Assembly (NCBI RefSeq): GCF_000143415.4
Contig: NW_003314420.1
Location: forward strand, 214,560 to 250,944
Length of the DNA stretch: 36,385 nucleotides
Direction: 5' to 3'
DNA from: Selaginella moellendorffii
Lineage: Eukaryota > Plantae > Lycopodiophyta
In this document: positions 2,881-32,784 of the stretch, piece after piece
How positions within the stretch are numbered: the first letter of the stretch is position 1
Layout: each line of letters opens with the position of its first letter
Position numbers and translations under genes: made by a program
The notes under the pieces: generated by a model
What the model was told of the DNA's origin: nothing
The model's input: the letters and a program-made list of their open reading frames with translations, nothing else
Database searches by the model: none

Positions 2881-2924
2881 ATAGGAACGACATCTGTCAT
2901 ATGTAATGTTAAAAACAACAACCT

Positions 2925-3111: not shown

Positions 3112-3289
3112 AGGCTGATGAGAGCAGCGAACCTCATGGCAATGGTGAAATGCTGAACTACATAGGCGCTTCTAGAAAAATGCTTCAAAAAAACTAGTTT
3201 ACCCTAAAAAATAAAAACGTTCCACTCTCAACTGTTTTTTTCCCACATGTCTTCATCTCCACCATTAAGCTCAAAAAGAATCTCAATTG

Positions 3290-6430: not shown

Positions 6431-6805
6431 ACTGGTGGTATGAGAGAGAACACGGATGAGGACCCAAGCATTGGATCTTCCCTACCTCTACCTCCACCGA
6501 CATATGGGTCGGAAGCATGGCCTTCACTTTCATAGATCCATCAGACAGCAAGCAACTGCACAAAAGTAACAATGCACCACTCTGGCTACAGATTGGATTG
6601 TGTGAGTAGGGTTTATGTAACTGAAAGAAGAAAGTCAGTGTCAAGGAAAAGAGGGCATCCACCAGGTAGGCGGTATTTCTTGGTGTTGGGGCACAAGAGG
6701 TAGGCGGTGCTAGGAATTGCAAGAGCAAGAGGAGGGTTGTCATGGTCAGGAGCAAAGCAACACCAAGAAAGCTAGGGCAAAGATCAGGTGCAGCTTTCCT
6801 TTGAG
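6431..6805 (-). pseudogene. Unidentified GC-richer gene fragment inserted where the helicase breaks off
   Basis: Composition shifts abruptly at ~6430. There is a hydrophobic stretch (LLLTMTTLLLLLQFL) and intron-like GT..TTTCAG / TTTTGTGCAG segments on the minus strand. Family not recognised. Confidence 0.35.
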
Positions 6806-6900
6806 GTTAATAGGGTACGAATTGATCCATGAAATGTGCAGTGGGCAGCAATGGTGATGGGACGAACAGGGACTGCCTCAGACAAATAGATCCCTCAACC

Positions 6901-9657: not shown

Positions 9658-9684
9658 TCCCAGCGTAGCTGGGACTTTTTCTAG
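9658..9684 (+). other. Helitron 3' terminus (subterminal hairpin + CTAG)
   Basis: TCCCAGC-GTA-GCTGGGA is a perfect 7-bp stem, followed by a 6-nt spacer, CTAG and then T. Confidence 0.88.
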
Positions 9685-9752
9685 TCAATCAATACTCTTT
9701 ATTTAAAGTTGCTATTTTGGCATCGGTGTCACATACTCCATTTTTAGAATAT
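9685..9752 (+). repeat. 'Head' repeat copy 1 (candidate Helitron 5' end); related copies at 18151-18203 and 19750-19815
   Basis: TCAATCAATACTCTTTTATTTAAAGTTGCTATT..GGCATCGGTGTC aligns with TACTCCTTTATTTAAAAGTGTTATTGGCATATGGCATCTGGTGTC (18151) and TACTCCTTTATTAAAAGTGCTATTGGCATATGGCATCTGG (19750). Each copy follows a CTAG. Confidence 0.6.
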
Positions 9753-10269
9753 CCATTTTTACTTATGGTGGATGCTCCCAATCGGACAGACTTAATCTGT
9801 GACGCTCCAAAAGAACAGTGAAGATCGTTACATGGTGGCAAAAACAGTGGCACCTCTTGAATTCTAGATTCATAGCTTTGGAAATTTTAGGTTTAAGGAG
9901 ACCAAATTTATCGAGCAAGATCATACAGTTCTTTACTACAGACCTTGGATATTGAAATATGAAGCCAGGTATGATGAATTTGTAACCACTTTTCTTCTTC
10001 TTTTGTACACTAATTCCATGTTGTTTGTTGTAGATTTTTTATCGTTATAGAATTGAAAGGCAGAGAGTTTATGGTTGCGGTATTCTTGCAGTGGTCTGGG
10101 TAGGATAAAATCCTAAAATTTTGTGTTGTATAGCTGTTTTACAGTTTTGGAGCCGAAGTGTTTGCTCGAAATTTTCCAGCGAGGAGCGCCCAATGCCATA
10201 CCATTTTGGGGGTTCTTCCTCCTCCAAGTTGTCCAGATAACCGGCTGAGTAAATCCCAGGCTGTTGACT

Positions 10270-11897
10270 GGGAATCCACAGCAGCGTGGCAGTCACTGCC
10301 TTCCTGACATTCTCGAGTTTTCTCAACAAGTGGTACCATGAGACGGTGCTCAAGCCGGGACAGCCTCCACTTCCACCGAGATCTTTGGCAACGTGGCTGC
10401 TTTTCTCAGAGGCTTCAAGTCTGGAAGACCGACTACATTGCAAAGTTGAGTGATCTTGTACTTTTTTTCGCTTGTTTAACTTGCGCTTTTTCTTGGTTTC
10501 AGGTGCAATCGAGTGGGTTTTACAAGGCGCGCGTTTCTGTTCTGGCAGCATGCAAATTTGTAAAGACAGCTTTGAGACAGGATGGGAGAGCACTGTTACG
10601 CTCATGGGACGAAATTTGTTTGCGGGGTTAACTGGAAAGAGCCACTTGAAGCTCCAAGCCCACTGTGAACAATCCCAAAGCTCTCAAGCAGTATGTGCCC
10701 CCTCATCGTCAACAACATAAAAGCGTGCCTTGCAAGGTGGTCTATGCAGGATAAGATCGTTCTTCTTACCGAGATGAGAAGGGTAAGCAGTCGTCTTAGT
10801 TTTCTTGTTGACACTGGTTTTTTCTGATATGACAGTTCGCGTTTCTAACTGTCCTCTACATTTTATATGGGAAAGACTCCAGTCTCGACATGGAAGAGAC
10901 TCTCCTTGTACTACATTGTCAACCAAGGCATTCAGGCTCTCCCCATCAACTTCCTCGGCACTGCGTACAACAAACCCATATGCGTTGTACATCATAGCTT
11001 TGTGACGTTTTCCCATTTTTCAGGCCGAGGCAAAAGCTCATCAAGCTTATCCAGGACGTGATCAACCAGCGCTTCTGGAAAGCCACAGAAACAAGCATTC
11101 TTTCGTTGCTCATGGATCAGCTGGATGACAAGAAAGAGGCGCTGGAAGACGCTCATATCATAGACATGCTCAACATCTACATGAACGCTGGTCACGACTC
11201 AACGGCTCATGTCATCATGTGGCTGGTGATTTCCTAAGGCAAAATCCTGATGTGTTTGAGAAAGTGAAGGTAAACCTTTGCAGTTTCATACAAACTTTCC
11301 TTCATACAATCTTTCTTCTTTAGGCCGAGCAAGACAACATTGCTAAAGTCATTTCAGAAGGGGAAATGCTCAACCTTTTATACATCAGAAGGGTGCCCTA
11401 CCTATCTAGTGTCAGTCCATTTTCCCCTGTTTTTATTCCTGAATTTATTTTTTATTTTTGCAGGTTGTCAATGAAACACTGCGACTTGCAAAAATGTCTC
11501 CAATGGTCTTTAGAAGAGCCTTGTTAGACCTCGAGTTCAATCGTGAGTCTGTTTCTTCTCTCAAGTGATTTTCAAGTGATGTTCAAGTGATTTGGAAGCG
11601 TGGCTAAGACAAGTACATGTGGATCCACCCTGACCCGGAAAAGTTCAATCCAGCTGGGCGGTACGAGATTCTCACCCATGCTCTGTAACTCTGGCTGGGG
11701 TTTTTCACTAGAAATATGGAGCATCTCCATTCACGTTCATACCCTTTGGGATGGGAAATCAAACTTACGAACTTGCCATCTTCATTGTCGTCCATTACTT
11801 CGTTATTACAGATGAAGATCTATTATTTGTGCCATTATTCCGTTATCTGGGGTTTGTAGGTGGACTGCCTTGGATCCAACAGCAAAGTTTCTTACTC
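10270..11897 (+). pseudogene. CYP88: Cytochrome P450, CYP88 (ent-kaurenoic acid oxidase-like, CYP85 clan) pseudogene, near full length
   Basis: Exons read FLNKWYHETVLKPGQPPLPP, IFGNVAAFLRGFKSG, FETGW.STVTLMGRNLFAGL, VNQGIQALPINFLGTAY, I-helix MLNIYMNAGHDSTAHVIMW, K-helix VVNETLR, PDPEKFNP, FIPFGMGNQTY and WTALDPTAK. The heme-ligand CPG segment is deleted and there are multiple frameshifts and stops. Confidence 0.88.
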
Positions 11898-11899
11898 AA

Positions 11900-13950
11900 C
11901 AGGATGAAACTCAAAGACGAGAAGATACTCAAAGGCAGGCTTGCCAAGTACATTATAGAGGTTGTTTGTAAGTCCCAAATGTTTCTCATCACAGGTCTTT
12001 GGAGGACATGCATAGCTTTTATGACCATGGACCAAATGTTGAGAACAGCAGCATCATCAAGAAGAGTTGCAGTCTAGCATTTAATTTGTCTCACTTCTGG
12101 CACAAGACAATAAGGTTGTTAACAATAAGGTCTTCATTTATTTTTTAACTAAGTCCTGTTTGCATAGCAATGCAATGCATCAGGAGCTTGCTGGAAACTA
12201 TGATTTACAGAATTTCCAAGAAGGTATGAGATTCACGGTGATTACAGCAAGTAACTATCAGGTACACTTTTAGTGTTTTCGCTCATGGGTTGTGATCTCC
12301 CTTATCTTGAGTTTAGAGAAGCCTGCAAGCATCACCAGATTGTAAGAACTCAGCCAGCTATGTGTGTCTTTGGAGACTGCCATTATAAGTACTTTTTCTT
12401 TAAATTTTATATAACCTTCACTGCTATGGATTCTGTGAATGGCATTTTCAGGACTCCTCTTCCTCCATCTTTCTAAAATTAATGCAGACAATTTCAAGAT
12501 TGGGAATGTGCTGGATTCATAAGTCAAGCTTGCCATTGTGTATGTTCTTCAACAGGAAGTTGTCCAGGCCCAGTGTTCTTCTCTAGAAGGTTTTCCAGGC
12601 CTAAAGGGCAATGCAATGCTTTTGGTGGTAGGGATTCGTGTGTGAAACCAGACAACGTACTCCATGTTTGCCAAAAGCATTATAACCAATTGTGCTTTAG
12701 ATTGAAGGCTGCAAAATAAACTGGTCTTACTAATATGACTGCTTGGCCACTTCTCATTGAAAATACATGTTTATGAAAAGTTTGCTTCCCTATGTTTGTT
12801 AGCTAATGGTATTGGGCAAAGAAACTTTTAATCCGGATAATACTCTAAAGCTCTACTTACAGGTGGTGGAGTTATTGAAATCTGCTAACAACACTTGAGG
12901 TTATTGTTTGTCTTTTAAAAGTAATAATTGCTGCTGTGTAAGTCTATAAGGTATTTATAATGGGACTCATTGATATCTGGAAAGATCATACTTAAAGCTT
13001 AACTTTGTCCTTGCAATTTACATTTAAGGAAGATTGAGTAATTAAAAACTATTCACTCCATAAAGAGGGAAATTGATTATAGATTAAAATTTAAAAAGAG
13101 TTATATTTTTTCAAAAGAAGATACACATTATCATGGATTATGATGTTGTATTGATGAACTTGGTCTTTTGTGGAATATCCTCCACCATACAAAATATTTA
13201 TTATATCCACATTACCTTCAATCTACCAATTGTCTAAAAATTATGAGAATACAAGGATATAAGCTTGAAAATTGATATATTCAGATAATTATTATATTTA
13301 TATATAAGGTATAAATAATTTAAAATATCAGGTGACAGAGAATTTAAGCTTGATGTAAAATTACAAAACACTATCTACATGAAAAAACATTTAATTATGT
13401 ACTTGAATTTATATGACAATAACTCTTGAAAGAAACTCCATGTATTTTCATATTACATTCAAATTCTAGAATTTACATTAGTGTTTTGAAGTTAGAAATT
13501 GGAAGGGAATGTTTCTGGTAGTGGTAGTAAGCTGTAAGTCTCTCTCATGAGTGATCTCTTCACATGAACACTGTATATGTGTTATTTTAACAGTTATAAT
13601 GTTATGCAAGATCTACATGAAAAAGGTAAAGTTGTAATCTATGCTTTTTTTCACTAGACTTAAGTGGTTTTTAGATCAAAGCATGCGATACCAAGCTGTG
13701 CTAAGATGAAAGCAAAGTAAACCCAGGCTTTTGTGCAAACAAATCAAAGAAGAATAAACATTTAACATGCAAGCACAGGTGAAGGATACAGAGATAGCAA
13801 ACATGTGATGGTAAACGTCTAGGAATTTGAACTCAAACATTCACTAATGGAGAGTAGATCCTGTTTCCAGTCCCTTTTTTTTAAATTATCAATATTTCAA
13901 GGATATGACTACTAAGTAGTTGAAGAGGGACCTTGGTTTTTATCTATTTT
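11900..13950 (+). pseudogene. Unidentified degraded exon/intron fragments fused downstream of the P450
   Basis: Short GT..AG-flanked exon-like pieces (MKLKDEKILKGRLAKYIIE, NAMHQELAGNYDLQNFQE, LMVLGKETFNPDNTLKLYLQVVELLKS). Most are also present in the duplicate. No family recognised. Confidence 0.35.
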
Positions 13951-14762
13951 GAAGTGCTTTGAAATAGATTAAAATCTTGTTTGCAATATTTCATATGAAG
14001 TGAAAATTTGTTTTTCTATATTGGGTGAGGATTTGGATGATAGATATGGTTTGTATTTGCTTTTTCATTCCTTCCTGATATACTAAATGGATATCATTGC
14101 AACACTGACTATTAGTGCCACTTATTCCTTTAATCTAAGGGCTCTATTCTATTTCTATGAGTAATCCATATAATTGTAAAAATTTGTCTTTATTTTTGAA
14201 ACTAATTTTTAAATTTTGTTATAGTTAAATTTGCAAGATTTATAGTACTTGAGGCAATGAGAATCTTGGCCAATGGATTGATTATGCCATCACTAGATGC
14301 AGAAGGAAAATTCTTGCTTGAGCCATGTGGATAGTGGTGATGGCCAACAAGGAAGATAACATGATTTATTAATATTATTTTATGAATATAATGCAGCAGC
14401 CTAGAGAGTTCAATTTCTGAGCACCGTGACTTATCCTATGATGGGAAATACAGCAAAATAACAAAATGGTATGCATCCATCCCTCTATCAGTTCAAGTTC
14501 ATTGATTTTCACATGCCAACACTAGGTGAAGATTGTGTGAGGATATGATTGTTGAGACATGTTAATTGCCATAACAACAATCTTGAATTGAAACAAGAGA
14601 AGGCTTCTAACTCCTAAGCTACTATTGTCCATTGCCTTACAGTTAGTATGTAGAGTGATGTAATAGAAGCCATTGGAGACTTTGCATGCTTACTTTGAAC
14701 CTGTACTTTATTTATCAAGTTCTTGTGTGCTTAGTAGTTTTTATCTCTTTTTTTCAATTTCT

Positions 14763-15208
14763 NNNNNNNNNNNNNNNNNNNNNNNNNNNNNNNNNNNNNN
14801 NNNNNNNNNNNNNNNNNNNNNNNNNNNNNNNNNNNNNNNNNNNNNNNNNNNNNNNNNNNNNNNNNNNNNNNNNNNNNNNNNNNNNNNNNNNNNNNNNNNN
14901 NNNNNNNNNNNNNNNNNNNNNNNNNNNNNNNNNNNNNNNNNNNNNNNNNNNNNNNNNNNNNNNNNNNNNNNNNNNNNNNNNNNNNNNNNNNNNNNNNNNN
15001 NNNNNNNNNNNNNNNNNNNNNNNNNNNNNNNNNNNNNNNNNNNNNNNNNNNNNNNNNNNNNNNNNNNNNNNNNNNNNNNNNNNNNNNNNNNNNNNNNNNN
15101 NNNNNNNNNNNNNNNNNNNNNNNNNNNNNNNNNNNNNNNNNNNNNNNNNNNNNNNNNNNNNNNNNNNNNNNNNNNNNNNNNNNNNNNNNNNNNNNNNNNN
15201 NNNNNNNN
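14763..15208. other. Assembly gap (446 N)
   Basis: Run of n. Confidence 1.
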
Positions 15209-16746
15209 TTTTCCTTCAATAGTTTCACGTGTTAAAAAGGTCTAAAACCCAGGAAGGTGTTGCTGGTTTACCTAGCAGTAGGATGATCGACTTGTATTCT
15301 ACTGCAGCAAGCCCATCCATCTACTGCAGCAAGAGCTCTCAGTGTTGAAAAAATAAACTAAGTTTTGCATAGGTATAGACTGCCATACCAAAGGCTCCCA
15401 AACTCCATTCAAGTATGCATCACAAATCTATGATCACAATGGTAATATTTCATCATGCAACAGTTGAAGTTTGAGACCTAGAGGATGAGAATGTGTATTA
15501 GACCGAGCCTCCACCAGTAAAAGGTGGCACATTGTGAAATAGATGAGGAAAATATTTTTTCTGTTAAATACTAATTTAGTAATAACAGTTTAGTTTTAGC
15601 TAGAAACATACATTATTTGAGAAGAAACATTTCTTGATTAATTACTGTTCTAAAATTCATATTAAAAAAATATAATATAAAATATAAAAATTTAATATTT
15701 ATATTTTATGATAATTCATGTTTGTATTTATACTTTTAATTGTGTTCACATTCAATTCTTATTACATTTTTAATACAGGCAATTTATGTAATTTCAAATA
15801 TATCCTCTATTTATTTCCTTATGTATTATATCTATTTTTTGGGATTCATGTAATGTTTCTCAACATAAATCTGCATTTAGATAATCTCAAACTAATTCAT
15901 AATCATGGTAAAAACAATATAGCAGTTGTATTTTAATTATTAGAGGTGGGAGAACTATGAGAAAACAACACATTCCTGATCCTTTTTATGCTACCCTAGA
16001 ATTACCTAGGATAGTTTTTAAATTATAAATAAGATATTAATCTAAATAAATAAAAAGATAACAAAAAAGCAGCAATATATATTAAAAAGAATTATAAATA
16101 TCAAGCTATATGTTTTGGTATAAACATACTTTTACAAATTAATGTAATGACAAGATATGTAATATTTAAATATGGTTATTATTAATATTGTGCACTTGTC
16201 ATTAGATATTTGTCAAATATATTATTTTTATTTGGAATATGAAAAAGAAATAGCAAAAGAACCTTCTTATAATGTCAAATCTAATATTAAATCCTATATA
16301 ATCCTAACTCTTTTCTTAATAACTGTTGGAGGAGGAGCTGCTTGGACACCACTGCCAATTTCTTAGAGAATTTCATCTCACTCTTATGTCACTACTACTG
16401 TTGGAATTGGTGATTTCTTGAATGATTTGTGAAGCAAATTTTAGTTCTATTAAGATAGAGTTATAACACTATCAAGATGGATATTGAAATATATTAGAAC
16501 AAACTTATTATTTTTAGCTAAATTGTTTTGATATGAAATAGTTCTTAACAATTATTGTTTTCTGTATTGTCCAGCGGAGATGGATTCCCTTAACTTTGAA
16601 TTTTCAATAGTGATTTATTAATCAGTGAGGACACAAATATGTATAAAGTTCATGTATCTCACATGCAGCACAGAATAAATCTCCCTTTCATATGGGGACC
16701 AAACCCTCAATATTTCCATGTAATTTATTTTCTTCTGTAACACTTA

Positions 16747-16854
16747 TGTAATTAGCAGTTTGGTGCCATTACATAAAGCATTTCTTACATCAAGATTATG
16801 TAATAGCATTGCAATGCTTCTTTTTTAAATATTTAATTTATGTGGAGGCAAGTT
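16747..16854 (-). mobile_element. Second Helitron/PIF1 helicase remnant, antisense, not in ORF track
   Basis: The minus strand translates NLPPHKLNI*KRSIAMLLHNLDVRNALCNGTKLLIT, matching the Helitron/PIF1 motif LPPHxLxLKxGxxVMLLRNLDxxxGLCNGTRL. Confidence 0.85.
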
Positions 16855-18204
16855 CGTGCAAATAATGGTATCCTATGATCACAATCTCCTATTTCAATAG
16901 TCCAAGCTAACACATTATTGCAAATGAGAGAAGATGAGACTTTGTAGTAAGCCATTACAGAATAGTGAATTTTGAATATTGAAAAATTAGAAGTTGATAG
17001 TTAAAGATGGATTTTAGAAAAAAAAATGGATTTGGTATTTGAAGCAGGAAAGAATAAGGAAGGTTTCTAATCTATGAAAAACATATTAGTATTTATATCA
17101 GAAAGTAATTTGTTTATTGCTATTTAGAGAAATATTTGGTGATGTAAATATTCCAAACATGCAATTTTTAAGGATATCTCAAAAATGTCATTATTTTTGT
17201 AGAAAACTCTACTCTTGAAGACTTAAGAAAATTATTCTCATTTATAAATATCCTCAAAAAATATCAAGCTTAAAATGAATATAAATCCCAGCTGTATATA
17301 TGTTAATTTTAACTTCTTTAATAATTCCTTTTAGGAAATATTTTTATTTTTTATTATATGTTGATTATTATTTTACATTATAATTTAAAAACAAATATAT
17401 AAAATATCATTATATTATTGGTGTATATTATAATATATTAGATCTAAGTTTATTTTTTAATTTTTATGTTCTTTATAATCAAAGTATCCACAATCTAATT
17501 TAGAGAATGAAGAATTAGAGAGGTAAAAATCAATATTAACACTTTATTTATAAATGATAATCTTGATACAACAATGTATATTATTTTTAAAAAAACTTAA
17601 GAACAACCTCTTTTTTTTTCAAAACCTAAAGCTCGGGCTGTGTAGCTTGAAGGCAAGCTCTCTGGCTGCTGCCACCACATCAGCATGGCCATAGTGAGGA
17701 GTTAACGATGAGATTTCATGCCTTACTGTGTCAGACAAATGATCCAACCCTGTGTAGAGTATCAAACTTGTAGGAAATGAGTACTACTTATATGAACAAC
17801 CCTGAAAATCAGTGTTGGCAAGGATGCATCCATGTCCCAGGCCATTGATAAGAAGATCCTTTGGTGTTTCAATCCCACAAACAGCAACAACAACCAAACA
17901 ACCAACTTGAGTTCCTTCAACTCAATCAGAAAGTAGACTATCTCTCAGTTTCTCTGAGTGACCAAGTCAACTTGCAGGGAGACTTGTGATGCTACAAATA
18001 TTAAACCTGGTGAATCAATCCTTTTAAGAGTGCCTTGGCTGGGAATTGAGTAGCATGTGCATGCATGGCCTTGCCACCAGTTTTCACCATCTATGCTCGG
18101 GTTATGTAAGCTCCTGAATTTAGACTTCCCAGAGAGGTCACCCAACCTAGTACTCCTTTATTTAAAAGTGTTATTGGCATATGGCATCTGGTGTCTTTTA
18201 TTCG

Positions 18205-19976: not shown

Positions 19977-20314
19977 GTGTGTGTGTGGATATCACCATTC
20001 TTCTTGTTCTCTCACAGAAGTGCACACCCTGAATGCCATCACCAGCAAGAGATACTCTTAACATGGTGGGATAAAATCCTAAAATTTTGTGTTGTATAGC
20101 TTTTTTACAGTTTTGGAGCTGATTGATATATCCAGTGTTTGCTCAAAATTTCCCAGCGAGGAGCACACTGGCAATGCAGCAGCTTACACTGGCACTCTCA
20201 AGTTATCGTGACTATCAATCAGATGCCATAGCTGAGCACCAACGCCATACCATTTTAGAGGTTCTTCCTCCTCGAAGTTGTCCAGATAGCCAGCTGAGTA
20301 AATCCCATGCTGTT

Positions 20315-21075
20315 GACTGGGAATCCACAGCAGCGTGGCAGTCACTACCTTCCTGACATTCTCGAGTTTACTCAACAAGTGGTACCATGAGCCGGTGCTC
20401 AAGCTGGGACAGCCTCCACTTCCAGAGGCTTCAACTCTGGAAGACCGACTACATTATAAAGTTGAGTGATCGCTTTTTCTTGGTTTCAGGTACAATCGAG
20501 TGGGTTTTTACAAGGCGTTTCTGTTCTAGCAGCCTACCGTCCTGATGCCACACTAGAGGCATGCAAATTTGTAAAGACAGATTTGAGACAGGATGGCCGG
20601 ACAGCACTGTTGCGCTCATGGGACGAAATTTGTTTGCGGGGTTAACTGGAAAGAGCCACTTGAAGCTCCAAGACCGCTGTGAATAATCCCAAAGCTCTCA
20701 AACAGTATGTGCCCCTAATCATCAACAATATAAAAGCATGCCTTGTGAGGTGGTTTATGCAGGATAAGGTCGTTCTTCTTACTGAGATGAGAAGGGTAAG
20801 CAGTCGTCTTAGTTTTCTTGTTGACACTGGTTTTTCTGATATGAAAGTTCACGTTTCTAACTGACATCAAAAGGATGCACTACCTATCTAGTGTCAGTGC
20901 TGGCCATTTTCCCCTGTTTGTTGTTCCAAAATTTCCTTGAAAAGTGTGTGCGTGCGTGTTTTGGTTTATTTCCTTGGCCAAGGGGCTTTTGTTCAAAATG
21001 AAAACCAGCTGCAACTTGCAAATATTTCTCCAATGGTTCTTTAGAAGAGCCTTGTTGGACGTCGAGTTTAATGGT
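20315..21075 (+). pseudogene. CYP88: Second, more deleted CYP88/KAO-like P450 pseudogene
   Basis: LLNKWYHEPVLKLGQPPLP, FETGWPDSTVALMGRNLFAGL, VNNPKALKQYVPLIINNIKACLVRW, then jumps to YLSS and RRALLDVEFNG. The I-helix and heme exons are absent. Confidence 0.85.
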
Positions 21076-21638
21076 GAGTCTGCATCTTCTCTCAAGTGAC
21101 CAAATGATGAAAACAGCAGCATCATCAAGAAGAGTTGCAGTCTAGCATTTAATTTTTCTCATTTCTGGCACAAGACAATAAGGTTGTTAAGGTTGTTAAC
21201 AATAAGGTCTCCATTTAATTTTTAACTAAGTCCTGTTTGCGCAGCAATGCAATGCATCAGGAGCTTGCTGGAAACTATGATTTACTGAATTTCCAGGAAG
21301 GTATGAGATTCATGCTGATTACAGCAAGTAACTATCAGGTACACCTTTAGTGTTCTCGCTCATGGGTCGTGATCTCCCTTATCTTGAGTTTAGAGAAGCC
21401 TGCAAGCATCACCAGATTGTAAGAACTCAGCCAACTATGTGTGTCTTTGGAGACTGCCATTATAAGTACTTTTTCTTTAAATTTTATATAACCTTCACTG
21501 CTATGGATTCTGTGAATGGCATTTTTAGGACCCCATGTTCCTCCTCTTCCTCCATCTTTCTAAAATTAATGCAGACAATTTCAAGATTGGCAATGTGCTG
21601 AAATCATAAGTCAAGCTTGCCATTGTGTATGTTCTTCA

Positions 21639-21749
21639 NNNNNNNNNNNNNNNNNNNNNNNNNNNNNNNNNNNNNNNNNNNNNNNNNNNNNNNNNNNNNN
21701 NNNNNNNNNNNNNNNNNNNNNNNNNNNNNNNNNNNNNNNNNNNNNNNNN
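21639..21749. other. Assembly gap (111 N)
   Basis: Run of n. Confidence 1.
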
Positions 21750-23539
21750 ACAACGTACTCCATGTTTGCCAAAAGCATTATAGCTTTAGATTGAAGGCTG
21801 CAAAATAAACTGGTCTTACTAATATGACTGCTTGGCCACTTCTCATGGAAAATACATGTTTATGAAAAGTTTCTTCCCTTATATGTAGTAAGGAAAAACA
21901 TTTTGGTACTATTGGTGTTTGGGAGCTAAAGGTATTGAGCAAAGAAACTTTTTATGGATAATAATCTAAAGCTCTACTTACAGGTGGTGGAGTTATGGAA
22001 ATCTGGTAACAACACTTGAGGTTATTGTTTGTATTTTAAAAGTAATAGTTGTTACTATGTAAGTCTATAAGGTATTCATAATGGGACTCATTGATATCTG
22101 GAAAGATCATACTTAAAGCTTTGTAGAAAAATTTTTCCTTACAATTTACATTTTAGGAAGATTGAGTAATTAAAAACTATTCACTCCAGAAAGAGGGAAA
22201 TTAATTATAGATTAAAATTTAAAAAGAGTTATTTTTTCAAAAGAAGATACAGATTACCATGGATTACGATGTTGCATTAATGAACTTGGTCTTGTGTGGC
22301 ACATCCTCCACTATACAAAATATCTATTATATCCACATTACCTCCAATCTACCAATTGTCTAAAAATTATGAGAATACAATGATATAAGCATGAAATTGA
22401 TATATTCATATATTAACTATATTTAAATATTAGGTACAAATAATTTAAAAAAATAGGATGACAGAAATTTTAAGCTTGATGTAAAATTACAAAAACACTA
22501 TCTACATGTAAAAAAATTAATTATGTACTTCTTGAATTTATATATGAATAACTCTTGAAAGAAACTCCATATTTTATTTTTATATTACATTCAAATTCTA
22601 GAATCTAGATTAGTGTTTCAAAGTTAAAAATTGGAAGGGAATGTTTTTGGCAGTGGTAGTAGGCTGTAAGTTTCTCTCACGAGTGATCTCTTCTCTATAT
22701 GAACACTGGGTGGGGTGTGGTTTTAACGGATAATAATATTATGCAAGAACTACAAGGAAAAAGGAAAAATGCTTTTTTCACTAGATTCTAAGTGGTTTTT
22801 AGATCAAAGCATGCAATACCAAGCTGTGCTAAGATGAGAGTAAAGTAAACCCAGGATTTTGCACAAACAAATTAAAGAAGAATGAACATTTAACATGCAA
22901 GTACAAGGTGAAGGATACAAAGATAGCAAACACGTACTTCTGGGAATTTTATCTCAAACATTCATTAATGGAGAATAGATCCTGTTTCCAATCCCATGTA
23001 GCAACTATTTTTTAAAATTATCAATATTTCAAGGATATAACACTACTAAGGTAGTTGAAGAGGGAACTTGGTTTTTATCTATTTCGAAGTGCTCTAAAAT
23101 AGATAAAAATCTTGGTTGCAACATTGTGCAAAAAAAATTTTTCTATATTGTGTGAGGATTTGGATGCTAGATATGAGTTTGATTTGCTTTTTCATTTCTT
23201 CCTGATATACCACAATGCATATATGCATAAAGTATCTGGGTTTTCATATAGTAATAGAAAGGATTAGACATGTTTGATACATGTTTTTCAAGATTTCTAA
23301 GTAGTTTCTTTATATACAAACATAAAATAATATAATTTTTCTTTTAAAAAATGGCTATTTTAAAAATAATGAAAAGGGAATGACTTTAAGGTCAATATAA
23401 ATAGTCAATGAATGAAACTTCAAAACAGTCTGATTTTGAATCACTTATTTCCAAACAAAGAAAACAAGTATGCACCTCTAGACTGAATTTTTTTTTGTCA
23501 TTACAACATATGTCTTATTGTCCCATATGTATTGTTGTA

Positions 23540-24524: not shown

Positions 24525-24724
<200 letters not shown>

Positions 24725-25568: not shown

Positions 25569-26711
25569 TGTAAGGAACCGACTCCCCGAGATGTCGTAGG
25601 CTAAAGGATCCCCGAAGGCTTGACCGAAATGACAAAGAGTTCATCGGATGGGACCGAGTCGAAGATCAAGTCCAAGACCGACTCTGAGACCGAGTTTGAG
25701 ATAGAGTCCGGGATCGAGCCGAGGCCGAATCGGAGACCGAGATCGAGACCGAGTTCGAGACCGAGTCCGAGATCCAAATCGGGTCCGAGACCGAGTCCGA
25801 GGTCGAGTCCGAAGTCGGGTCCGAGATCGGGTCCGAGATTGAGTCCGAGATCGAGTCCGAGACCGAATCCGAAGTCGGGTCCAAGATCGAGTCCGAGATC
25901 AATTCTGAGACTAAGTCCACATACTAATACAGCTCAAGAGGTGAAAGCCCAAAGCATGTGTCTCCTAGGGGGGGGGGGGGGGGGGGGAACTTCAGGGGGT
26001 TCCAAAAGTATAATAAGGATAGGGAGGTCCCGGAACCAGTCTTGAAAGAACTCTCTAGGGGGGCTTCCAAACTGACTTGAGGTTGAAAACTGGGGCCCAA
26101 GGGCCTTTGGGTGGGAATGAACATGGGCCCTTAAAAAAGGCTGGAGGGGGCCCCAAAGGGAAAAGGCTCCAAAAATAACTCCCCCCTCCCGAAAGTGAAA
26201 CCAACTGCGGTGCTCCCGGCTCATGTGGAGTGGTGCCCCACTTGAGTACCTTGTGGCTTATTGGTCCTCGCCCTTCCTAGGGGCTTGGGCCTTCCCTTCG
26301 GGAAGGAAGTGGGGGGGTAGAGGTACCCATACCGGGCCCCGACATCCCGAAGCAAGTGCTGCACCCAAGGCTTGGGATTTAGAGGGTCCTATGATCAAGT
26401 CTTGTGGTACCAAGGGGTGTTAGGAATCTGGAGGCTTGGTGTGCTTGGCTGCTTGTGCTTGCGGGGAGTGTAGCCGAACCTTAAGTCCAATCTAACCCGG
26501 GGAGGGGGATTGGGAGAGATTTGGGAATCCGTAGATGGGTGGCTAACACTCCGTTGCTCGTGCAGTGAGTAGCTAAAACCAAGTAGGACCAAGTAGTTGC
26601 TGATACCATAGGCGAGAACCTTGGCGAGGGAACTTAGCACAAGCCAAGGCAAAGTTGGTCGGATAGACGAGGTAAGCTGGCAAATTGGAAAGGAAAAATT
26701 TGTGGCTTACA
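25569..26711. mobile_element. Solo LTR (1143 bp) of an LTR retrotransposon
   Basis: Starts TGTAAG (25569) and ends CTTACA (26711), a 6-bp terminal inverted repeat with TG..CA. It is flanked by CTATT (25564-25568) and CTGTT (26712-26716), a 5-bp TSD with one transition. GC-rich, with no gag/pol. Confidence 0.8.
25653..25918 (+). repeat. 12-bp (2x6-bp) tandem array within the LTR, consensus ~CCGAGATCGAGT, ~22 units
   Basis: e.g. TCCGAGATCGGGTCCGAGATTGAGTCCGAGATCGAGTCCGAGACCGAAT. Confidence 0.9.
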
Positions 26712-27399: not shown

Positions 27400-27545
27400 G
27401 TGGGTGGTGGTGGCAGTACTAGTGTCAGCAATGGTGGTGATGACAATGGTGATGATGGCACTAGTGGCAATGATGACAGTGGTGGTAATGGTGGCAATGG
27501 CAGTGATGGTGGTGGTGGTGGTGATGGTGGTGATGACGGTAATGT
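27400..27545. repeat. Degenerate GGT/GAT/AAT trinucleotide low-complexity tract
   Basis: GGTGGTAATGGTGGCAATGGCAGTGATGGTGGTGGTGGTGGTGAT... Confidence 0.8.
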
Positions 27546-28075
27546 GGGCTGTGTTTGTCTCAACTCTACCATTAACCAACTTGATAGTAAGACTATTGTA
27601 CAGTTAAATTGGACTTATCAAATACAACAGTAGTTGCATTATTGATGTTATTGGGCTTGGTTAAAAAAAAGAACTTCCACAATACACTTAAGAACAAGAG
27701 GCACCAATGCACATCAGGTAAATTCTTTATTTTTGAAATGATTATATTCGCAAATGTTTATCCCCAGGCCACAGCTGGGGCACACTATGTTTTAAGCCAG
27801 CTGGATCAGCTGGATCAGGAAATTCTTTGATTTACAGTTTCTGTTGCAAGAGGTGCTGGATGCTCAGATTCCTTGCAAATCAGTGGCACCTGCAAGGTGG
27901 GAGTGAGATTGTGGGGAGTGGAAGAGAAGATGAGCAGAGTGGGGCATGCAGGTGGGCTTCTTTAGTAAGAGGGTGATGTGAAGTTTAGCACGTTACTGGG
28001 TGGTACGGGGCACAAAGCCAATGCGTGAATGTCATGCATTCAATGTTTGATAGGGACAGTTTGACTAGCTATGAT

Positions 28076-31000
28076 TTATGAAGTTTCACTTACTGATCTT
28101 GGAAAGCAGATTGATGGCCCATCTGGTGCGTACCTTGGATCATAGGTTCCAGGACCAGGTGTGGGACTGCTGGCCTTATAAGGCCGCTTTGGGTACATGC
28201 TGCAAGATGGAGTGCTTTGCCTACTATTTACAACGTACGCTCCTGGCCCTGGTATTTCATCCACTTGCCTATCTGTGAGCCTCTCTCTTATAGTGAAGCT
28301 TGAAGATCGAGTTTCTCCCTTGGGCGAATATGCACCAGGGCCTGGGAGCAGATCTGGAGCTTTGTTCTTGAGCTGTCCATACATAGTAAAGGACGGCGTT
28401 GATGGTTTTTGTTCAGTCATATATGCTCCGGGTCCGGGTGAGTCACTGTCTGGCGGTGGACTGAACCGAAAGGGCATGGTCAACGCCGGTCCGTCGAGGC
28501 TGGATGGTGAAGAATATGTTCCAGGGCCCGGTGTCTTCTCCACAAGAGTTTCACGGAACTTTTCTCCTAGAGTGAAAGCTGGCGGTGATGGGCTACGAAG
28601 CTCTTCTTTGGGGTGGTACGCTCCCGGCCCAGGAACATCGCCATCAAAATTTGCTGTCTCACGAGGCTTGCGCCTGATGGTGAAGGAGATTCCTCGTTCG
28701 GAAGTGATCGGGTACGTGCCAGGTCCAGGATTGGCCGTTAGTGCAGGTGCCCTGCTTCCCAGCTTACCAGCGAGTGAGAACGCTGACAAGCCCTTCCTTT
28801 CAGCCGGCGAGTAGGCTCCAGGGCCAGGAGTGTCGCTAACTTTGTAATCCTGCACTCTGGTGCCAAATTTATAAGCTGGAGCTTCTGACCAGGGGGTAGC
28901 GATCGCATCCATGTAGTCACCTGGTCCAGGTGTTTCCTGCGCAAACTGGTTATCCCCAGTACGGATGCCAAATGTGATCATGGGCTCCAGTGCTGCCGGA
29001 GCGCCGTAGTGTGCGCCAGGACCAGGTGTGTCGAGCGCGTTTGGTCTCTCTATACGGACTGCCATGCTGTACTTTGGACCGTCGTCATCTTGCTTTGGGC
29101 TGTAGGCTGCAGGGCCTGGCGATCGGTTTGCCTCCTTGCTGGTAAACTTGTTAGCCATAGTGAATCCTGGTGCATCATGGAGCGGCTCAGGGCTGTAATG
29201 TCCTGGCCCTGGACCATCGCTACCCTTTTGTGGACCAGACCACGCTGTCTCAGTTATCAGCACATTCTTGCAAGTCTCATATACAGGGTTGGGATTGTAC
29301 GCCGCAGGACCGGGGCTCTCTTCCATCTTGCATGATGGCAAGCTTCCACCCAATGAGTAGGCTGGCGCCGCTGGCGAGCAGAGACGTGTACCAGAACCAA
29401 TAATGTAGGAACCTGGGCCGGGAGTTGGATCTAAGGGCCGTGGCTCCACTCGTGAAGCCATGGTGTAGTGAGGACCATCTGTGGTGGTTGTTTCCAGATA
29501 AGCACCAGGCCCTGGCGTTTCTTCAGGCTTTGGATCCAGTATTTTCTTTCCAATGGCATATGAAGGACTGTTGCTCCTCCTGTTTGCTTCATAGGCTCCA
29601 GGACCAGGCGACTTGTCAGGTTCCGGGTGCTGTAACTTTGCGCCCAGTGAAAAGGCGACCCCCGTGTGCTCGGGTAGTGGATATGAGCCAGGCCCGGGAG
29701 TCTTATCCAAGAGTGGTGTCCTGGGACGAGCTTGCATGCTGAAGCTTTGAAGGTCCTTGCCGACGTTCCCTTTGTTCACCGTGTATGATCCTGGCCCTGG
29801 GTTATTAACACCCCCAAGGTGGGTGGCAGCTTGCCTCGACGGCATTGTGTAAGCCGGTCCTTCCCGCTTGTGCTCAATGCGGTAAGCTCCGGGCCCCGGG
29901 GTCACAAACAGTTCTGGAGCAGGAACAGCTCGACCACTCAACGAAAAAGCTGGCGCATTCGATTGCAAAATGAGTGCATAGGCTCCGGGTCCGGGTATTG
30001 ATGCGTTATCTGAGTCAGGCAAGTCATATCTGCCCCGGATGCTCGCGGTGGGCCCCTGCCTTGGTCCGGTTGTCTCGTAATCACCAGGACCGGGAGTTTC
30101 CTGGTCATGCGGCGGGCTGAGTTTGTTGCCAATAGTGACACCAGGTTGCTGTCCGATTGCTTGATAGGCAGCCGGATAGGAACCAGGGCCTGGGGTTGGG
30201 TCTGCCGCAACGTAGGTTCCTTTGTTGCTGATGGAGTAGTGAGGTCCAGACGGGGTACATTTGATGTTGTAATGGCCGGGACCAGGTTGTACTGGTATAT
30301 TTGTCTCTTCAACTTTTGCTCCCATCGTAAATGATGGTGACGAAGCCTTTGGCCAAACTGAGTAGGCACCAGGGCCTGGTGTTGAGCCAGTGAGCTTAGG
30401 CTCCTGGCGCTTAGAGCCAATGATAATGCTACATGGTGGTGATGAGAGCCTGGAGTCGGACGTCTGATAGTGACCTGGGCCAGGCATGTTCTCTGGCTTG
30501 AGAGGTGCCTGAATTTTCTTGCCAAAGGAGAACACTGGCGACATGGGCTTGTTGGTCGTAACTGTGTAGCTTCCGGGCCCTGGGTTGCCTTGAGTGGGAT
30601 CTGGAATGCACGACAACTTGCCAAAAATTGTGTAGGCTGGTCCATTGGTGACACTGTCATGGTGATAAGCTCCAGGTCCTGGCAAGCTCTTGCTGTCCAA
30701 CCTGTTGACAATTGATGACCTGTCTCCCATTGTGTAGGATGCAGAGGAGGAAAATGACTTCACTTCATATGCACCGGGTCCAGGGAACTGGTTTCCCCCT
30801 GGCCTGTTGGTGAGGCCACCCAGGGTGTAGGATGGGCCAGTTGGTGTATAATTTGATGACCTTGCAGATGGAGTTGCAGAATGATATGATACGCCCAGTA
30901 ACTTCGTGGACCTCTGTTTGGTGATTATTTTGAAAGCAGGGCCTGTGGCGTCGACTTTATAGTACCCTGGTCCAGGAGTCATTAAAGTGTTTTTCACTGG

Positions 31001-32038
31001 TTGCAGCTTCGGTCCAATGGAACAGGAGAGCTGTGAAGCAGCTGCGGCTTTAGTGCTGGGGTTATAATGTCCGGGGCCGGAGGCCAAAGGAGCGGGGTCC
31101 CTGCGTGCTGACAATCTCAAGTCAGGAGCCCTTCCTTTCTCTGAGGAAGGACACTGGTCTTGTGAAGGGATTGAGCGTGCAGTGCTGGCTCTAGATACTG
31201 GTGCAGACGCAACTGATGCACCACCCCGAAGTTGTGATGGCTTTTGCCCCAGCTCTACTGTGTAACTGGCGGCTTCCAGGTTATTGTCAAGGTGCCAAAC
31301 TACGGGGAGTTCAAGGGAGCTGTTCTTGCCAGAGTTGTGAGACCAGCCAGCAAATTGAGATTCAGGGCTGGAAGAACTTCTGCTAATGTTGCCATCGTTG
31401 CCGTTCTTTAACTTGTGGCCATGCTTTTGTGGATCCAGCTTTATTGTTGCAACTTGAATATCTCTCTGGGAATGGTGACGAGAACCTGGGTTTTTCGATG
31501 ATCGGTTGGTGCTGCAAGTGCATGAATAGTCCAGTGTTTCTGGATTGGGACTGCTGCTCTTTGTCTGTTTGCTGCTAAAGACGGTCCCTCTTGTGGAAGT
31601 AGTGTCGAGAGGAACACGGTAGGTTCCTGGCCCGGGAGTGATAGACGTCTTTTTATACACCTTCTTCCCCATTGTGAAGGCCATGCTCGTCGATTGTGAC
31701 CTTGGAGAGTATTCTGCTGGACCAGGGGTGGGTTTTGTCGTTGGCTCGAATCTTGATCCAAAAGAGAAGCATGGCGATGCGACCCGTCCGACAACGCCGA
31801 ATGGGGAGAGATCGTAAGAGCCAGGCCCGGGTGTTTGGCTGGGTTTGGCGGGAATCCGTGCATGGATTCTGAATGCCGGTCCGTCCTGGCGCTTGTGGAC
31901 GTGATAGGATCCTGGGCCTGGCGATTTCTCGCTGGACTCCTTAATCTGTAACTTGCTGCCGAATGTGTAGCCCGGCTCAATCTTTCGCCTTGGAGAAACG
32001 CGTGGACTGGAACATGATTGGCCATCGGGCTTCTTCAT
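28076..32038 (-). CDS. Giant SHIPPO/STPG (PGP-repeat, ODF3-like) axonemal protein, 1320 aa
   Basis: Uninterrupted 3963-bp ORF with 33 PGP motifs (mostly PGP(G/A)xY) plus one SGPGHY. Most are followed ~8-12 aa later by a P-x-(F/Y)-(S/T)-(M/L/I/F)-G-like motif. Period is ~28-33 aa. This is the sperm-tail PG-rich (SHIPPO) repeat signature. A probable short upstream intron lies at ~32062-32116. Confidence 0.92.
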   Translation of the reverse strand: MKKPDGQSCSSPRVSPRRKIEPGYTFGSKLQIKESSEKSPGPGSYHVHKRQDGPAFRIHARIPAKPSQTPGPGSYDLSPFGVVGRVASPCFSFGSRFEPTTKPTPGPAEYSPRSQSTSMAFTMGKKVYKKTSITPGPGTYRVPLDTTSTRGTVFSSKQTKSSSPNPETLDYSCTCSTNRSSKNPGSRHHSQRDIQVATIKLDPQKHGHKLKNGNDGNISRSSSSPESQFAGWSHNSGKNSSLELPVVWHLDNNLEAASYTVELGQKPSQLRGGASVASAPVSRASTARSIPSQDQCPSSEKGRAPDLRLSARRDPAPLASGPGHYNPSTKAAAASQLSCSIGPKLQPVKNTLMTPGPGYYKVDATGPAFKIITKQRSTKLLGVSYHSATPSARSSNYTPTGPSYTLGGLTNRPGGNQFPGPGAYEVKSFSSSASYTMGDRSSIVNRLDSKSLPGPGAYHHDSVTNGPAYTIFGKLSCIPDPTQGNPGPGSYTVTTNKPMSPVFSFGKKIQAPLKPENMPGPGHYQTSDSRLSSPPCSIIIGSKRQEPKLTGSTPGPGAYSVWPKASSPSFTMGAKVEETNIPVQPGPGHYNIKCTPSGPHYSISNKGTYVAADPTPGPGSYPAAYQAIGQQPGVTIGNKLSPPHDQETPGPGDYETTGPRQGPTASIRGRYDLPDSDNASIPGPGAYALILQSNAPAFSLSGRAVPAPELFVTPGPGAYRIEHKREGPAYTMPSRQAATHLGGVNNPGPGSYTVNKGNVGKDLQSFSMQARPRTPLLDKTPGPGSYPLPEHTGVAFSLGAKLQHPEPDKSPGPGAYEANRRSNSPSYAIGKKILDPKPEETPGPGAYLETTTTDGPHYTMASRVEPRPLDPTPGPGSYIIGSGTRLCSPAAPAYSLGGSLPSCKMEESPGPAAYNPNPVYETCKNVLITETAWSGPQKGSDGPGPGHYSPEPLHDAPGFTMANKFTSKEANRSPGPAAYSPKQDDDGPKYSMAVRIERPNALDTPGPGAHYGAPAALEPMITFGIRTGDNQFAQETPGPGDYMDAIATPWSEAPAYKFGTRVQDYKVSDTPGPGAYSPAERKGLSAFSLAGKLGSRAPALTANPGPGTYPITSERGISFTIRRKPRETANFDGDVPGPGAYHPKEELRSPSPPAFTLGEKFRETLVEKTPGPGTYSSPSSLDGPALTMPFRFSPPPDSDSPGPGAYMTEQKPSTPSFTMYGQLKNKAPDLLPGPGAYSPKGETRSSSFTIRERLTDRQVDEIPGPGAYVVNSRQSTPSCSMYPKRPYKASSPTPGPGTYDPRYAPDGPSICFPRSVSETS

Positions 32039-32784
32039 TCTAGTATGCTCCTTCTGAAGACCTGCACACCATGTGATGGATTAGAATGTCAGTGCGGTGC
32101 AACGGTCATACACACCGTTTTGAGGATTGCAAGTGCGATGAGGAGTGCTTACTAAATTCCTGGGTTTTGAGAGTGCAAGAGATGCTAGTGATTCCACGTG
32201 GGACGAGGAGTTTAATTAGATTCTATTTTTGTATCTTTCACAAATTTCAGATCAATATTTTCTAGTTTCCGTGTTATCTTCTAAATTCCTTTCATAGATC
32301 TGTGATCATGCAGAGGCAGCTTTCCGGACAAAGGGAATTAGATTCTCGTTCACCATACCTGTTCAATTTTAAGCACAAACAACCACTATAATCTATAGAC
32401 AACACAAAAAAGATCACATTAATCTTAAGACTGGAGATTACCTTCTTACATTAACCAAGAATCTGAGAGAACTATTTAAATTTTAGTCCTTTAATGCATA
32501 TCTTTATTTATCAGCCAAGCGCATATACTGTTATCAGACTTTTGGATATGGCAGTTGCCACGCCGCCAGGGTTCTACGGATCTCAACGTGAGGGTAAGGT
32601 GCGTACCTCCATTGCTCGACTAGCTCACTCTTCAACAACTTACTCCGAGTCATGCAACAACTGATGGGACTAATCACCTCGTGGAGATTTGCAACATTGG
32701 TTTGTTTCTTGTTCTTATTTCTTCCCTTGGCATTGAATTTAGTTAGAAGACCAGAGATAACCAGTTCTCTTCTATCGATAGCTG

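What the first reader, a model, noticed from the sequence alone, without database searches (positions are those of the whole stretch)
28076..32038. Giant single-ORF plant protein with 33 SHIPPO/PGP repeats: candidate long microtubule-binding 'ruler' in plant sperm
Seen: 4 PGP repeats, then a ~180-aa Ser-rich spacer, then ~30 near-contiguous units of ~30 aa. They sit in one 4-kb intron-free ORF, although the neighbouring genes have tiny introns. The units are strongly diverged outside the motif, so this is an old, maintained array rather than a recent expansion. Established: ODF3/SHIPPO-1/STPG proteins are typically a few hundred residues with far fewer repeats, and they bind along axonemal microtubules. 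Inference: if each unit spans one 8-nm tubulin dimer, the C-terminal block could cover ~240 nm, more than one 96-nm axonemal repeat. It might instead bind a plant-sperm-specific array such as the spline/multilayered structure.
Basis: partly seen in the sequence, partly recalled or inferred. Interest (0 to 1): 0.72.

Follow-up and report, generated by a model that had tools for sequence, protein, structure and literature searches.

The report
Spikemoss 33-repeat sperm-tail PG protein
This is a real, intact 1,320-residue gene of the spikemoss Selaginella moellendorffii built almost entirely of 33-36 'PGPGxY' microtubule-binding repeats; it belongs to the known sperm-tail PG-rich (SHIPPO/STPG/CIMAP1) family, whose very long forms prove common in flagellated eukaryotes, so it is an uncharacterised but fairly ordinary new member and not a demonstrated 'ruler'.

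Summary
Window 28076-32038 (minus strand) is one uninterrupted 1320-codon ORF with exactly 33 PGP motifs. An HMM built from other organisms' units finds 36 units: about 5 at the N-terminus, a ~153-aa Ser-rich disordered linker, then 31. Pfam SHIPPO-rpt matches at E=5e-81.

I verified the organism as Selaginella moellendorffii (scaffold GL377724.1, 100% identical DNA).

- Published cryo-EM already shows that PGPGxY is a microtubule-binding motif placed once per 8-nm tubulin dimer.
- The protein is not exceptional in size. Relatives with 30-90 units occur in ciliates, metamonads, euglenozoans, green algae, a malawimonad and Ginkgo.
- Unit length is tightly held (32.4 +/- 1.5 aa) while copy number ranges from 12 to 90. 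That fits lattice matching, not a fixed-length ruler.

No relative exceeds 42% identity, and no 1:1 ortholog could be shown.

The likeliest role is an extended 'staple' along protofilament grooves of the sperm's stable microtubules, either axoneme or spline.

Verdict: a new member of a known kind, of modest interest. The scan also noted another SHIPPO gene elsewhere in this genome.

The parts
28076..32038 (-). Complete ORF/CDS of the PG-repeat (SHIPPO/STPG-family) protein: 1320 codons plus the stop at 28076-28078. This equals about GL377724.1:242635-246597.
31559..31993 (-). N-terminal block (aa 16-160): a leading half-unit plus 4 canonical PGP units
31088..31546 (-). Ser-rich linker (aa 165-317) with no family match, predicted disordered
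28079..31087 (-). C-terminal array (aa 318-1320): 29 canonical plus 2 degenerate units of 30-36 aa. Consensus (T/S)PGPG(A/S/T)Y ... GP(S/A)(F/Y)(T/S)(M/I)xx(R/K).
27815..28093 (-). Candidate, untested 3' terminal intron. The GTAAGT donor starts at 28093 in phase 0 and the acceptor AG ends at 27890. The alternative last exon would encode 24 aa in place of the final 5.
   Evidence: sequence only; no RNA data
32039..32784 (.). Intergenic/promoter region shared head-to-head with the BTB/POZ gene. It holds one DUO1-site-like GACCGTT at 32101-32107, which is not significant.

Best explanation
The ORF encodes an intrinsically disordered, filament-like microtubule-associated protein of the sperm-tail PG-rich repeat family (SHIPPO/ODF3/STPG/CIMAP1).

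Proposed mechanism:
- Each ~32-aa unit carries one P-G-P-G-x-Y motif, which docks into the wedge between two protofilaments.
- The rest of the unit, including a second conserved half-motif GP(S/A)(F/Y)(T/S)(M/I), acts as a spacer of about 8 nm.
- Successive units therefore bind successive tubulin dimers along one protofilament groove.
- With about 31 units after the linker and about 5 before it, one molecule could lie along roughly 250 nm plus 40 nm of microtubule. It would act as a longitudinal staple that stabilises very stable microtubules.

Selaginella has cilia only on its biflagellate sperm. The protein is therefore most likely made during spermatogenesis and sits on the axonemal doublets, possibly also on the spline.

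Shown here: the ORF, the repeats, family membership, the constrained unit length, predicted disorder and the organism.
Taken from the literature: the motif-to-lattice binding mode.
Inferred: location, sperm expression and the stabilising role.
For: Family and motif:
- PF07004, E=4.7e-81.
- PGP invariant in 33/33 units, G at position 4 in 30/33, Y in 32/33. That is PGPGxY in 29 units and PGPAxY in 3.
- unit spacing 32.4 +/- 1.5 aa despite about 25% identity outside the motif. The same 32-35 aa period is seen in relatives from malawimonads, ciliates, metamonads and Ginkgo. This points to selection on length, i.e. lattice matching.

Structural and localisation precedents:
- (PMC10105768): cryo-EM of Tetrahymena STPG1A shows PGPGxY is the microtubule-binding motif in the outer wedge, with linkers acting as 8-nm spacers.
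- the only PDB relatives are doublet-microtubule proteins (CIMAP1A/B/C, sea-urchin ODF3, entries 9e5c/9y6s 'Sperm-tail PG-rich repeat', DMAP7, STPG1A/STPG2).
- (PMC11779644): CIMAPs bind close to the external DMT surface in all mammalian motile cilia examined.
- (PMC11151096): Chlamydomonas PG-repeat proteins of 959 and 384 aa are in the axoneme proteome.

Disorder: one search gives pLDDT 38 with no secondary structure. Composition is P 14%, S 12%, G 11%.

Distribution: the named hits are overwhelmingly from organisms with cilia or flagella. The land-plant hits are only Ginkgo, Selaginella and Diphasiastrum, and no angiosperm or conifer appears.

Organism.
Against:
- The units are shorter (about 32 aa) than the ~40-aa spacers measured in Tetrahymena STPG1A. 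The chain would have to be about 70% extended to step 8.2 nm, and a 4-nm step cannot be excluded from sequence.
- No PG-repeat protein longer than 590 aa has been resolved on a microtubule.
- Only about a quarter of database hits carry organism names, so absence from non-flagellate plants is suggestive rather than proven.
- No close ortholog exists (maximum 42% identity), so purifying selection could not be measured.
Confidence: 0.7

Rival explanations
1. Molecular ruler. The fixed number of units would measure out a defined length of about 240 nm or more, beyond one 96-nm axonemal repeat, and so position other structures.
For:: Kubo et al. proposed that 12-motif ODF3L proteins span 96 nm; a clubmoss homolog (Diphasiastrum P0175) also has exactly 12 PGP motifs; counting degenerate units gives 36 in total, which would equal 288 nm or 3 x 96 nm, and Stentor P0004 also has 36 PGP.
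Against: - The 36 units are split 5 + 31 by a ~153-aa linker.
- 29-31 units give 232-254 nm, which is 2.4-2.65 x 96 nm.
- Copy number across the family is 12 to 90 with no preferred multiple.
- The Ginkgo protein with the same layout has about 17-19 array units.
- No unit-by-unit register is conserved with any homolog.
- Kubo et al. themselves state that the role of ODF3L in 96-nm periodicity is unknown.
Confidence: 0.08
2. A binder of the spline/multilayered structure. The protein would decorate the sperm-specific ribbon of stable singlet microtubules instead of, or in addition to, the axoneme.
For: (bioRxiv 10.1101/361105): two Giardia SHIPPO-repeat proteins localise to the hyperstable ventral disc and median body as well as to axonemes, so the motif is not restricted to doublets. 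A very long array does not fit the 48/96-nm averaging in which all solved PG proteins (<=590 aa) were found.
Against: There are no data on plant sperm. Equally long arrays occur in organisms without a spline or MLS, such as ciliates, trypanosomes and Trichomonas. Every structurally resolved member is on doublet microtubules.
Confidence: 0.2
3. An unexpressed or decaying gene relic, or a mis-called ORF with no present function.
For: The exact product is absent from the 15-billion-protein collection and from its gene calls. No transcript-derived protein matches it. It lies near a scaffold end in transposon-rich DNA.
Against: A 3963-nt open frame in 38%-GC DNA cannot arise or persist by chance. 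PGP is invariant in 33/33 units and Y in 32/33, and unit length is conserved while the other positions have diverged. The ESM Atlas holds the sequence letter for letter, so the ORF has been called before.
Confidence: 0.05

Closest known systems
Tetrahymena STPG1A / STPG2 / ODF3L (Kubo et al. 2023, PMC10105768; PDB 8g2z)
   Same: Same P-G-P-G-x-Y (or P-G-P-x-Y) motif repeated at regular intervals. It was shown by cryo-EM to bind the outer inter-protofilament wedge once per 8-nm tubulin dimer. The unit profile detects them only weakly.
   Different: They have 5 or 12 motifs, ~40-aa spacers and 293-364 aa, and STPG1A/2 weave into the lumen. Here there are 33-36 motifs, ~32-aa units and a two-block layout with a Ser-rich linker. 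PDB E-values to STPG1A/2 are only 0.018-0.036.
Mammalian and sea-urchin ODF3/SHIPPO1 = CIMAP1A/B/C (PDB 8iyj, 8otz, 8snb)
   Same: These are the best solved-structure matches (E=1e-8 for the whole protein, 8e-17 for the unit profile). They share Pfam family PF07004 and are microtubule-associated proteins of motile cilia and sperm.
   Different: They are about 250-300 aa with roughly 6-8 motifs, a fifth of this protein's size, and have no internal linker.
Long uncharacterised PG-repeat proteins of protists and green algae (Stentor SteCoe_33427; Hexamita SHIPPO 1-like; Trypanosoma ~2000 aa; Trichomonas XP_001581839.2; Gefionella 3374 aa; Chlamydomonas Cre12.g555378 and XP_001699390)
   Same: Same class: 1000-3400 aa made almost entirely of 30-90 units of 32-38 aa. 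The Chlamydomonas 959-aa member is in the axoneme proteome.
   Different: Only 25-42% identical, with no positional register. Most lack the layout of a four-unit N-terminal block followed by a linker. None has a described function.
Ginkgo biloba Gb_20696 (P0009)
   Same: The closest match in layout: 4 N-terminal units, a long Ser/Pro-rich linker, then a contiguous C-terminal array running to the end. It is 32% identical over 658 aa, and Ginkgo also has swimming sperm.
   Different: The array has only about 17-19 units and the linker is much longer. The alignment register is ambiguous, since shifted alignments score nearly as well. It is an automatic gene model that may be incomplete.
Giardia SHIPPO-repeat disc-associated proteins DAP9148 / DAP103164
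   Same: SHIPPO-repeat proteins on hyperstable microtubule arrays. They are a precedent for binding outside the axoneme.
   Different: Different organism and organelle. I made no sequence comparison here.

Membership tests
Sperm-tail PG-rich repeat family (Pfam PF07004 SHIPPO-rpt; ODF3/STPG/CIMAP1) | Score above the Pfam gathering threshold for SHIPPO-rpt | tested here: met
   262.4 bits against a cut-off of 20, E=4.7e-81
Sperm-tail PG-rich repeat family (Pfam PF07004 SHIPPO-rpt; ODF3/STPG/CIMAP1) | Repeated P-G-P-G-x-Y (or P-G-P-x-Y) core motif | tested here: met
   PGPGxY in 29 units, PGPAxY in 3 and PGPGAHY in 1. PGP is invariant in 33/33.
Sperm-tail PG-rich repeat family (Pfam PF07004 SHIPPO-rpt; ODF3/STPG/CIMAP1) | Regular spacing of motifs of about 30-40 aa | tested here: met
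   32.4 +/- 1.5 aa (n=27). Relatives average 32-38 aa.
Sperm-tail PG-rich repeat family (Pfam PF07004 SHIPPO-rpt; ODF3/STPG/CIMAP1) | Motif binds the inter-protofilament wedge of microtubules at 8-nm intervals | not testable with these tools
   Known for Tetrahymena STPG1A. AF2 of aa 1-420 alone is disordered.
Sperm-tail PG-rich repeat family (Pfam PF07004 SHIPPO-rpt; ODF3/STPG/CIMAP1) | Occurs in organisms that build cilia or flagella; expressed in ciliated or sperm cells | tested here: inconclusive
   The host makes flagellate sperm (organism verified). Named hits are overwhelmingly from organisms with cilia or flagella, with no angiosperm or conifer, but most hits are unnamed.
96-nm-type ODF3L (12-motif) subclass | 12 PGPGxY motifs in about 400 aa | tested here: not met
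   This protein has 33-36 motifs. The 12-motif type exists separately in a lycophyte (Diphasiastrum P0175).
Axonemal molecular rulers (CCDC39/CCDC40-like function) | Length corresponds to a whole multiple of the structural period and is conserved among orthologs | tested here: not met
   232-254 nm for the array is 2.4-2.65 x 96 nm. Copy number varies from 12 to 90 in the family. The Ginkgo layout-homolog has about 17-19 array units. No true ortholog was available, so this is not a strict test.

The most novel reading that the evidence does not exclude
Very long PG-repeat arrays (30-90 units) may form a distinct, unstudied class of 'lattice tapes'. Their unit length would be locked to the 8-nm tubulin dimer. 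One molecule would bridge several 96-nm axonemal repeats, or run along non-axonemal ribbons such as the plant sperm spline, giving long-range longitudinal reinforcement or registration that the short, structurally solved members cannot. The Selaginella and Ginkgo '4 units + linker + long array' layout would then be a vascular-plant sperm version that tethers two microtubule segments or two neighbouring microtubules.
Probability: 0.12. Interest if true: 0.6.

Novelty: new member of a known kind. Interest (0 to 1): 0.3.

Why it matters
Plant spermatozoids build axonemes and a unique spline/multilayered structure, yet very few of their structural microtubule proteins are known. This gene is a concrete candidate with a testable mechanism.

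More generally, the survey shows two things about PG-repeat proteins. They keep a 32-35-aa unit across eukaryotes while copy number ranges from 12 to 90. And no member longer than 590 aa has been placed on a microtubule. The long forms are therefore a small open question in cilium structural biology.

The gene also appears to be missing from the main public protein sets for S. moellendorffii, so it is a minor annotation gain. It does not overturn anything known.

Tried and rejected
2. Exact look-ups of the product and of ten neighbouring ORFs found nothing.
3. Looking for a shorter fragment model of the gene with the N-terminal 420 aa gave no identical hit.
Resent as aa 1-1199, it found no relative above 42% identity.
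5. Unit-by-unit register test against 17 homologs gave no convincing diagonal (z<=3), so orthology and conserved copy number could not be shown.
6. S. moellendorffii scaffold GL377833.1, which holds three SHIPPO models including P0043, was tested as a possible allele. This was rejected: there is no DNA similarity, so it is a separate paralog cluster.
7. Diphasiastrum P0175 was tested as an ortholog and rejected. It is a 12-unit single-exon gene.
8. The DUO1 (male-germline MYB) site in the promoter occurs once, P about 0.2-0.3, so it is not evidence.
9. AF2 of aa 1-420 to look for a hidden domain in the linker gave a disordered model with pLDDT 38. A single-sequence model is weak evidence, and no fold search was worthwhile.
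10. Plant literature on this family: nothing in main texts or in the Marchantia DUO1 supplements.
11. A secreted proline-rich wall-protein reading was rejected. The N-terminus is polar and basic with no hydrophobic signal peptide by eye, and the Pfam match is decisive.
12. A flagellar gene cluster around the ORF was rejected. The neighbours are F-box/Kelch, a Helitron fragment and BTB/POZ.
It was repeated without that reference.

Full report
OBSERVATION. The window holds one uninterrupted ORF at 28076..32038 on the minus strand, 1320 aa, starting at an ATG. An in-frame stop lies 15 codons upstream. The translation contains exactly 33 PGP motifs. Four are at aa 40-135 and 29 lie between aa 355 and 1294. 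Pfam SHIPPO-rpt (PF07004) matches at E=4.7e-81, 262 bits against a cut-off of 20.

To count repeats without circularity, I built an HMM from 197 units taken only from five other organisms' proteins. It finds 36 units in this protein. Of these, 34 have i-Evalue <=0.01, against 0 such hits in 50 shuffled copies. They are the 33 canonical units plus degenerate ones at aa 16-29, 321-330 and 397-407. The layout is therefore about 5 units, a ~153-aa Ser-rich linker (aa 165-317), then about 31 units.

AGE OF THE ARRAY. Tandem Repeats Finder detects no DNA-level repeat inside the ORF. Outside the six-residue core, units average 25% identity, and adjacent units are no more alike than distant ones. The unit consensus is (T/S)-P-G-P-G-(A/S/T)-Y, followed about 13 residues later by G-P-(S/A)-(F/Y)-(T/S)-(M/I)-x-x-(R/K). 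PGP is invariant in 33/33 units and Y is present in 32/33. Unit length is tightly held at 32.4 +/- 1.5 aa over 27 consecutive spacings. Old, diverged units that keep their motif and their length are a signature of selection on spacing.

GENE MODEL. The ORF has no 60-nt window below 40% GC and no plausible in-frame intron, so sequence supports a single coding exon for the whole array. One caveat applies. A canonical GTAAGT donor lies five codons before the stop (window 28093, phase 0). A pyrimidine-rich acceptor lies 204 nt downstream (27890). If used, it would replace the last 5 residues with 24 others. This would not touch the repeats. Other lycophyte SHIPPO genes are also single ORFs: S. moellendorffii P0043 at 768 aa and Diphasiastrum P0175 at 410 aa. 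Lack of introns is therefore a trait of the family here and not peculiar to this locus.

ORGANISM AND ANNOTATION STATUS. Earlier scan notes called this genome Selaginella moellendorffii. I verified it. A neighbouring F-box/Kelch exon is 99% identical to SELMODRAFT_431561. Window 1-18156 is 100% identical to scaffold GL377724.1 apart from a gap. By that offset, the ORF lies at about GL377724.1:242,635-246,597, and the window ends at the scaffold end.

The exact product is not on record in the gene-position collection. Neither the full-length nor the N-terminal word search found an identical or near-identical protein. An exhaustive HMMER search of 1.84 billion cluster representatives found 1567 relatives, none above 42% identity. 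The ESM Atlas, however, holds the sequence letter for letter. Some pipeline has therefore called this ORF before. It is best described as unnamed and uncharacterised, not as undiscovered.

WHAT THE FAMILY DOES.
- Kubo et al. 2023 (PMC10105768) showed by cryo-EM of Tetrahymena doublets that P-G-P-G-x-Y is a microtubule-binding motif sitting in the outer wedge between protofilaments.
- They also showed that the ~40-aa stretches between motifs act as 8-nm spacers, so consecutive motifs bind consecutive tubulin dimers. They proposed that 12-motif ODF3L proteins span 96 nm.
- All solved-structure relatives of the present protein or its unit profile are doublet-microtubule proteins. These are CIMAP1A/B/C of mammalian sperm and cilia, sea-urchin ODF3, entries 9e5c/9y6s named 'Sperm-tail PG-rich repeat', DMAP7, and Tetrahymena STPG1A/STPG2. 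The one spurious hit is nucleoporin NSP1, a low-complexity match.
- In Chlamydomonas, PG-repeat proteins of 959 aa (Cre12.g555378) and 384 aa (FAP271) are in the axoneme proteome and are reduced in mbo2 mutants. The same table names a Physcomitrella STPG2-like protein (PMC11151096).
- In Giardia, two SHIPPO-repeat proteins sit on the hyperstable ventral disc and median body as well as on axonemes (bioRxiv 10.1101/361105).

AlphaFold2 on residues 1-420 gives pLDDT 38 and no secondary structure. With the composition of P 14%, S 12% and G 11%, this fits a protein that is extended and ordered only on its lattice.

MOST LIKELY MECHANISM. The protein probably lies along a protofilament groove. Each PGPGxY would dock once per tubulin dimer, making the molecule a longitudinal staple of about 250 nm (C-terminal array) plus about 40 nm (N-terminal block), joined by a flexible linker. 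A 32-aa unit has a contour length of about 11 nm, so it can step 8.2 nm if roughly 70% extended. It cannot step 16 nm, and a 4-nm step is not excluded by sequence alone.

Land plants have cilia only on sperm. Among named database hits, the land plants are only Ginkgo, Selaginella and Diphasiastrum, all with swimming sperm. Expression in spermatogenesis is therefore the natural inference, but it remains an inference.

WHY THE 'GIANT' AND 'RULER' CLAIMS FAIL.
- Long arrays are common. Counts of PGP units are Stentor 36, Hexamita 32, trypanosomes 34-42, Diplonema 43, Trichomonas 39 (1576 aa), two transcriptome proteins 48 and 49, and Gefionella 90 in 3374 aa.
- Unit length stays at 32-38 aa while copy number ranges from 12 to 90.
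- The Ginkgo protein Gb_20696 shares the layout of four N-terminal units, an S/P-rich linker and a C-terminal array, but its array has about 17-19 units.
- No homolog shows unit-to-unit register with the Selaginella protein (best diagonal z<=3).
- 29-31 units correspond to 232-254 nm, or 2.4-2.65 axonemal repeats.
- Counting all 36 units gives 288 nm, which is 3 x 96 nm. The linker splits them 5 + 31, though, so I treat this as numerology.

The pattern fits lattice matching of the unit, not measurement by the whole molecule.

SURROUNDINGS. The neighbours are a Helitron fragment, an F-box/Kelch gene, a duplicated segment and a head-to-head BTB/POZ gene. None is flagellar, unlike the sperm-gene clusters noted elsewhere in this genome. 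A single DUO1-type site (GACCGTT, 32101-32107) lies about 65 nt upstream of the ATG but is not significant (P about 0.2-0.3). Another scaffold (GL377833.1) carries three SHIPPO gene models with no DNA similarity to this locus, and the scan noted a SHIPPO gene on another piece. Selaginella therefore has a small family of these genes.

VERDICT. This is a new, uncharacterised member of a known family, with a plausible mechanism backed by the literature. The size is not exceptional, the ruler idea is unsupported, and sperm specificity is untested. Interest is modest (0.3). The residual novelty is that no PG-repeat protein with more than about 15 units has ever been localised or resolved.

Noticed in passing
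window 28088-28093 (donor) and 27890 (acceptor): A canonical GTAAGT donor lies in phase 0 five codons before the stop of the SHIPPO ORF, and a pyrimidine-rich ...TTGCAG acceptor lies 204 nt downstream. Together they could give an alternative 24-aa C-terminus.
   Followed up: partly
window 32101-32107: A single DUO1-binding-site-like motif (RRCSGTT; GACCGTT on the gene's strand) lies about 65 nt upstream of the ATG. One occurrence is expected by chance about 20-30% of the time.
   Followed up: yes
window 20239-23222 versus about 10190-14094: Segments of the window at 20.2-23.2 kb match the part of the same scaffold corresponding to window about 10.2-14.1 kb at 86-94% identity. This is an intra-window duplication or dispersed repeat covering a small annotated gene (171-aa model).
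   Followed up: no
window 4003-4407: An ORF matches the Helitron helicase-like N-terminal domain (PF14214, E=1e-17), so this is a Helitron transposon fragment.
   Followed up: no
window 24527-24723 and 25655-25918: A perfect (AT)98 microsatellite, and a 12-bp tandem array (about 20 copies, 73-77% matches) inside a GC-rich (0.5) ORF-poor block at 25-27 kb. Also (GTG)n-type repeats at 27473-27540.
   Followed up: no
window 32785 to about 35930 (+): A multi-exon BTB/POZ (+BACK-like) gene lies head-to-head with the SHIPPO gene, sharing a ~750-bp intergenic region. Gaps between its exon ORFs are about 80-100 nt.
   Followed up: partly
L001 (S. moellendorffii GL377833.1) 4568-14301: Three SHIPPO-repeat gene models (768, 387 and 311 aa) lie on one strand within 10 kb. 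This is a paralogous cluster unrelated at DNA level to this locus. The 768-aa one carries the misleading public name 'DNA-directed RNA polymerase II subunit RPB1'.
   Followed up: partly
L004/L005 (Diphasiastrum complanatum CM055103.1): Two identical copies, about 105 kb apart, of a single-exon 410-aa gene with exactly 12 PGP motifs. This is the same count as the Tetrahymena ODF3L proteins proposed to span 96 nm.
   Followed up: partly
L002 (Logan SRR31724248 contig): The SHIPPO-repeat hit P0086 sits in a gene-dense, apparently intron-poor contig next to a CPAP/Tcp10_C centriole protein gene and a second SHIPPO gene. The organism is unknown.
   Followed up: no
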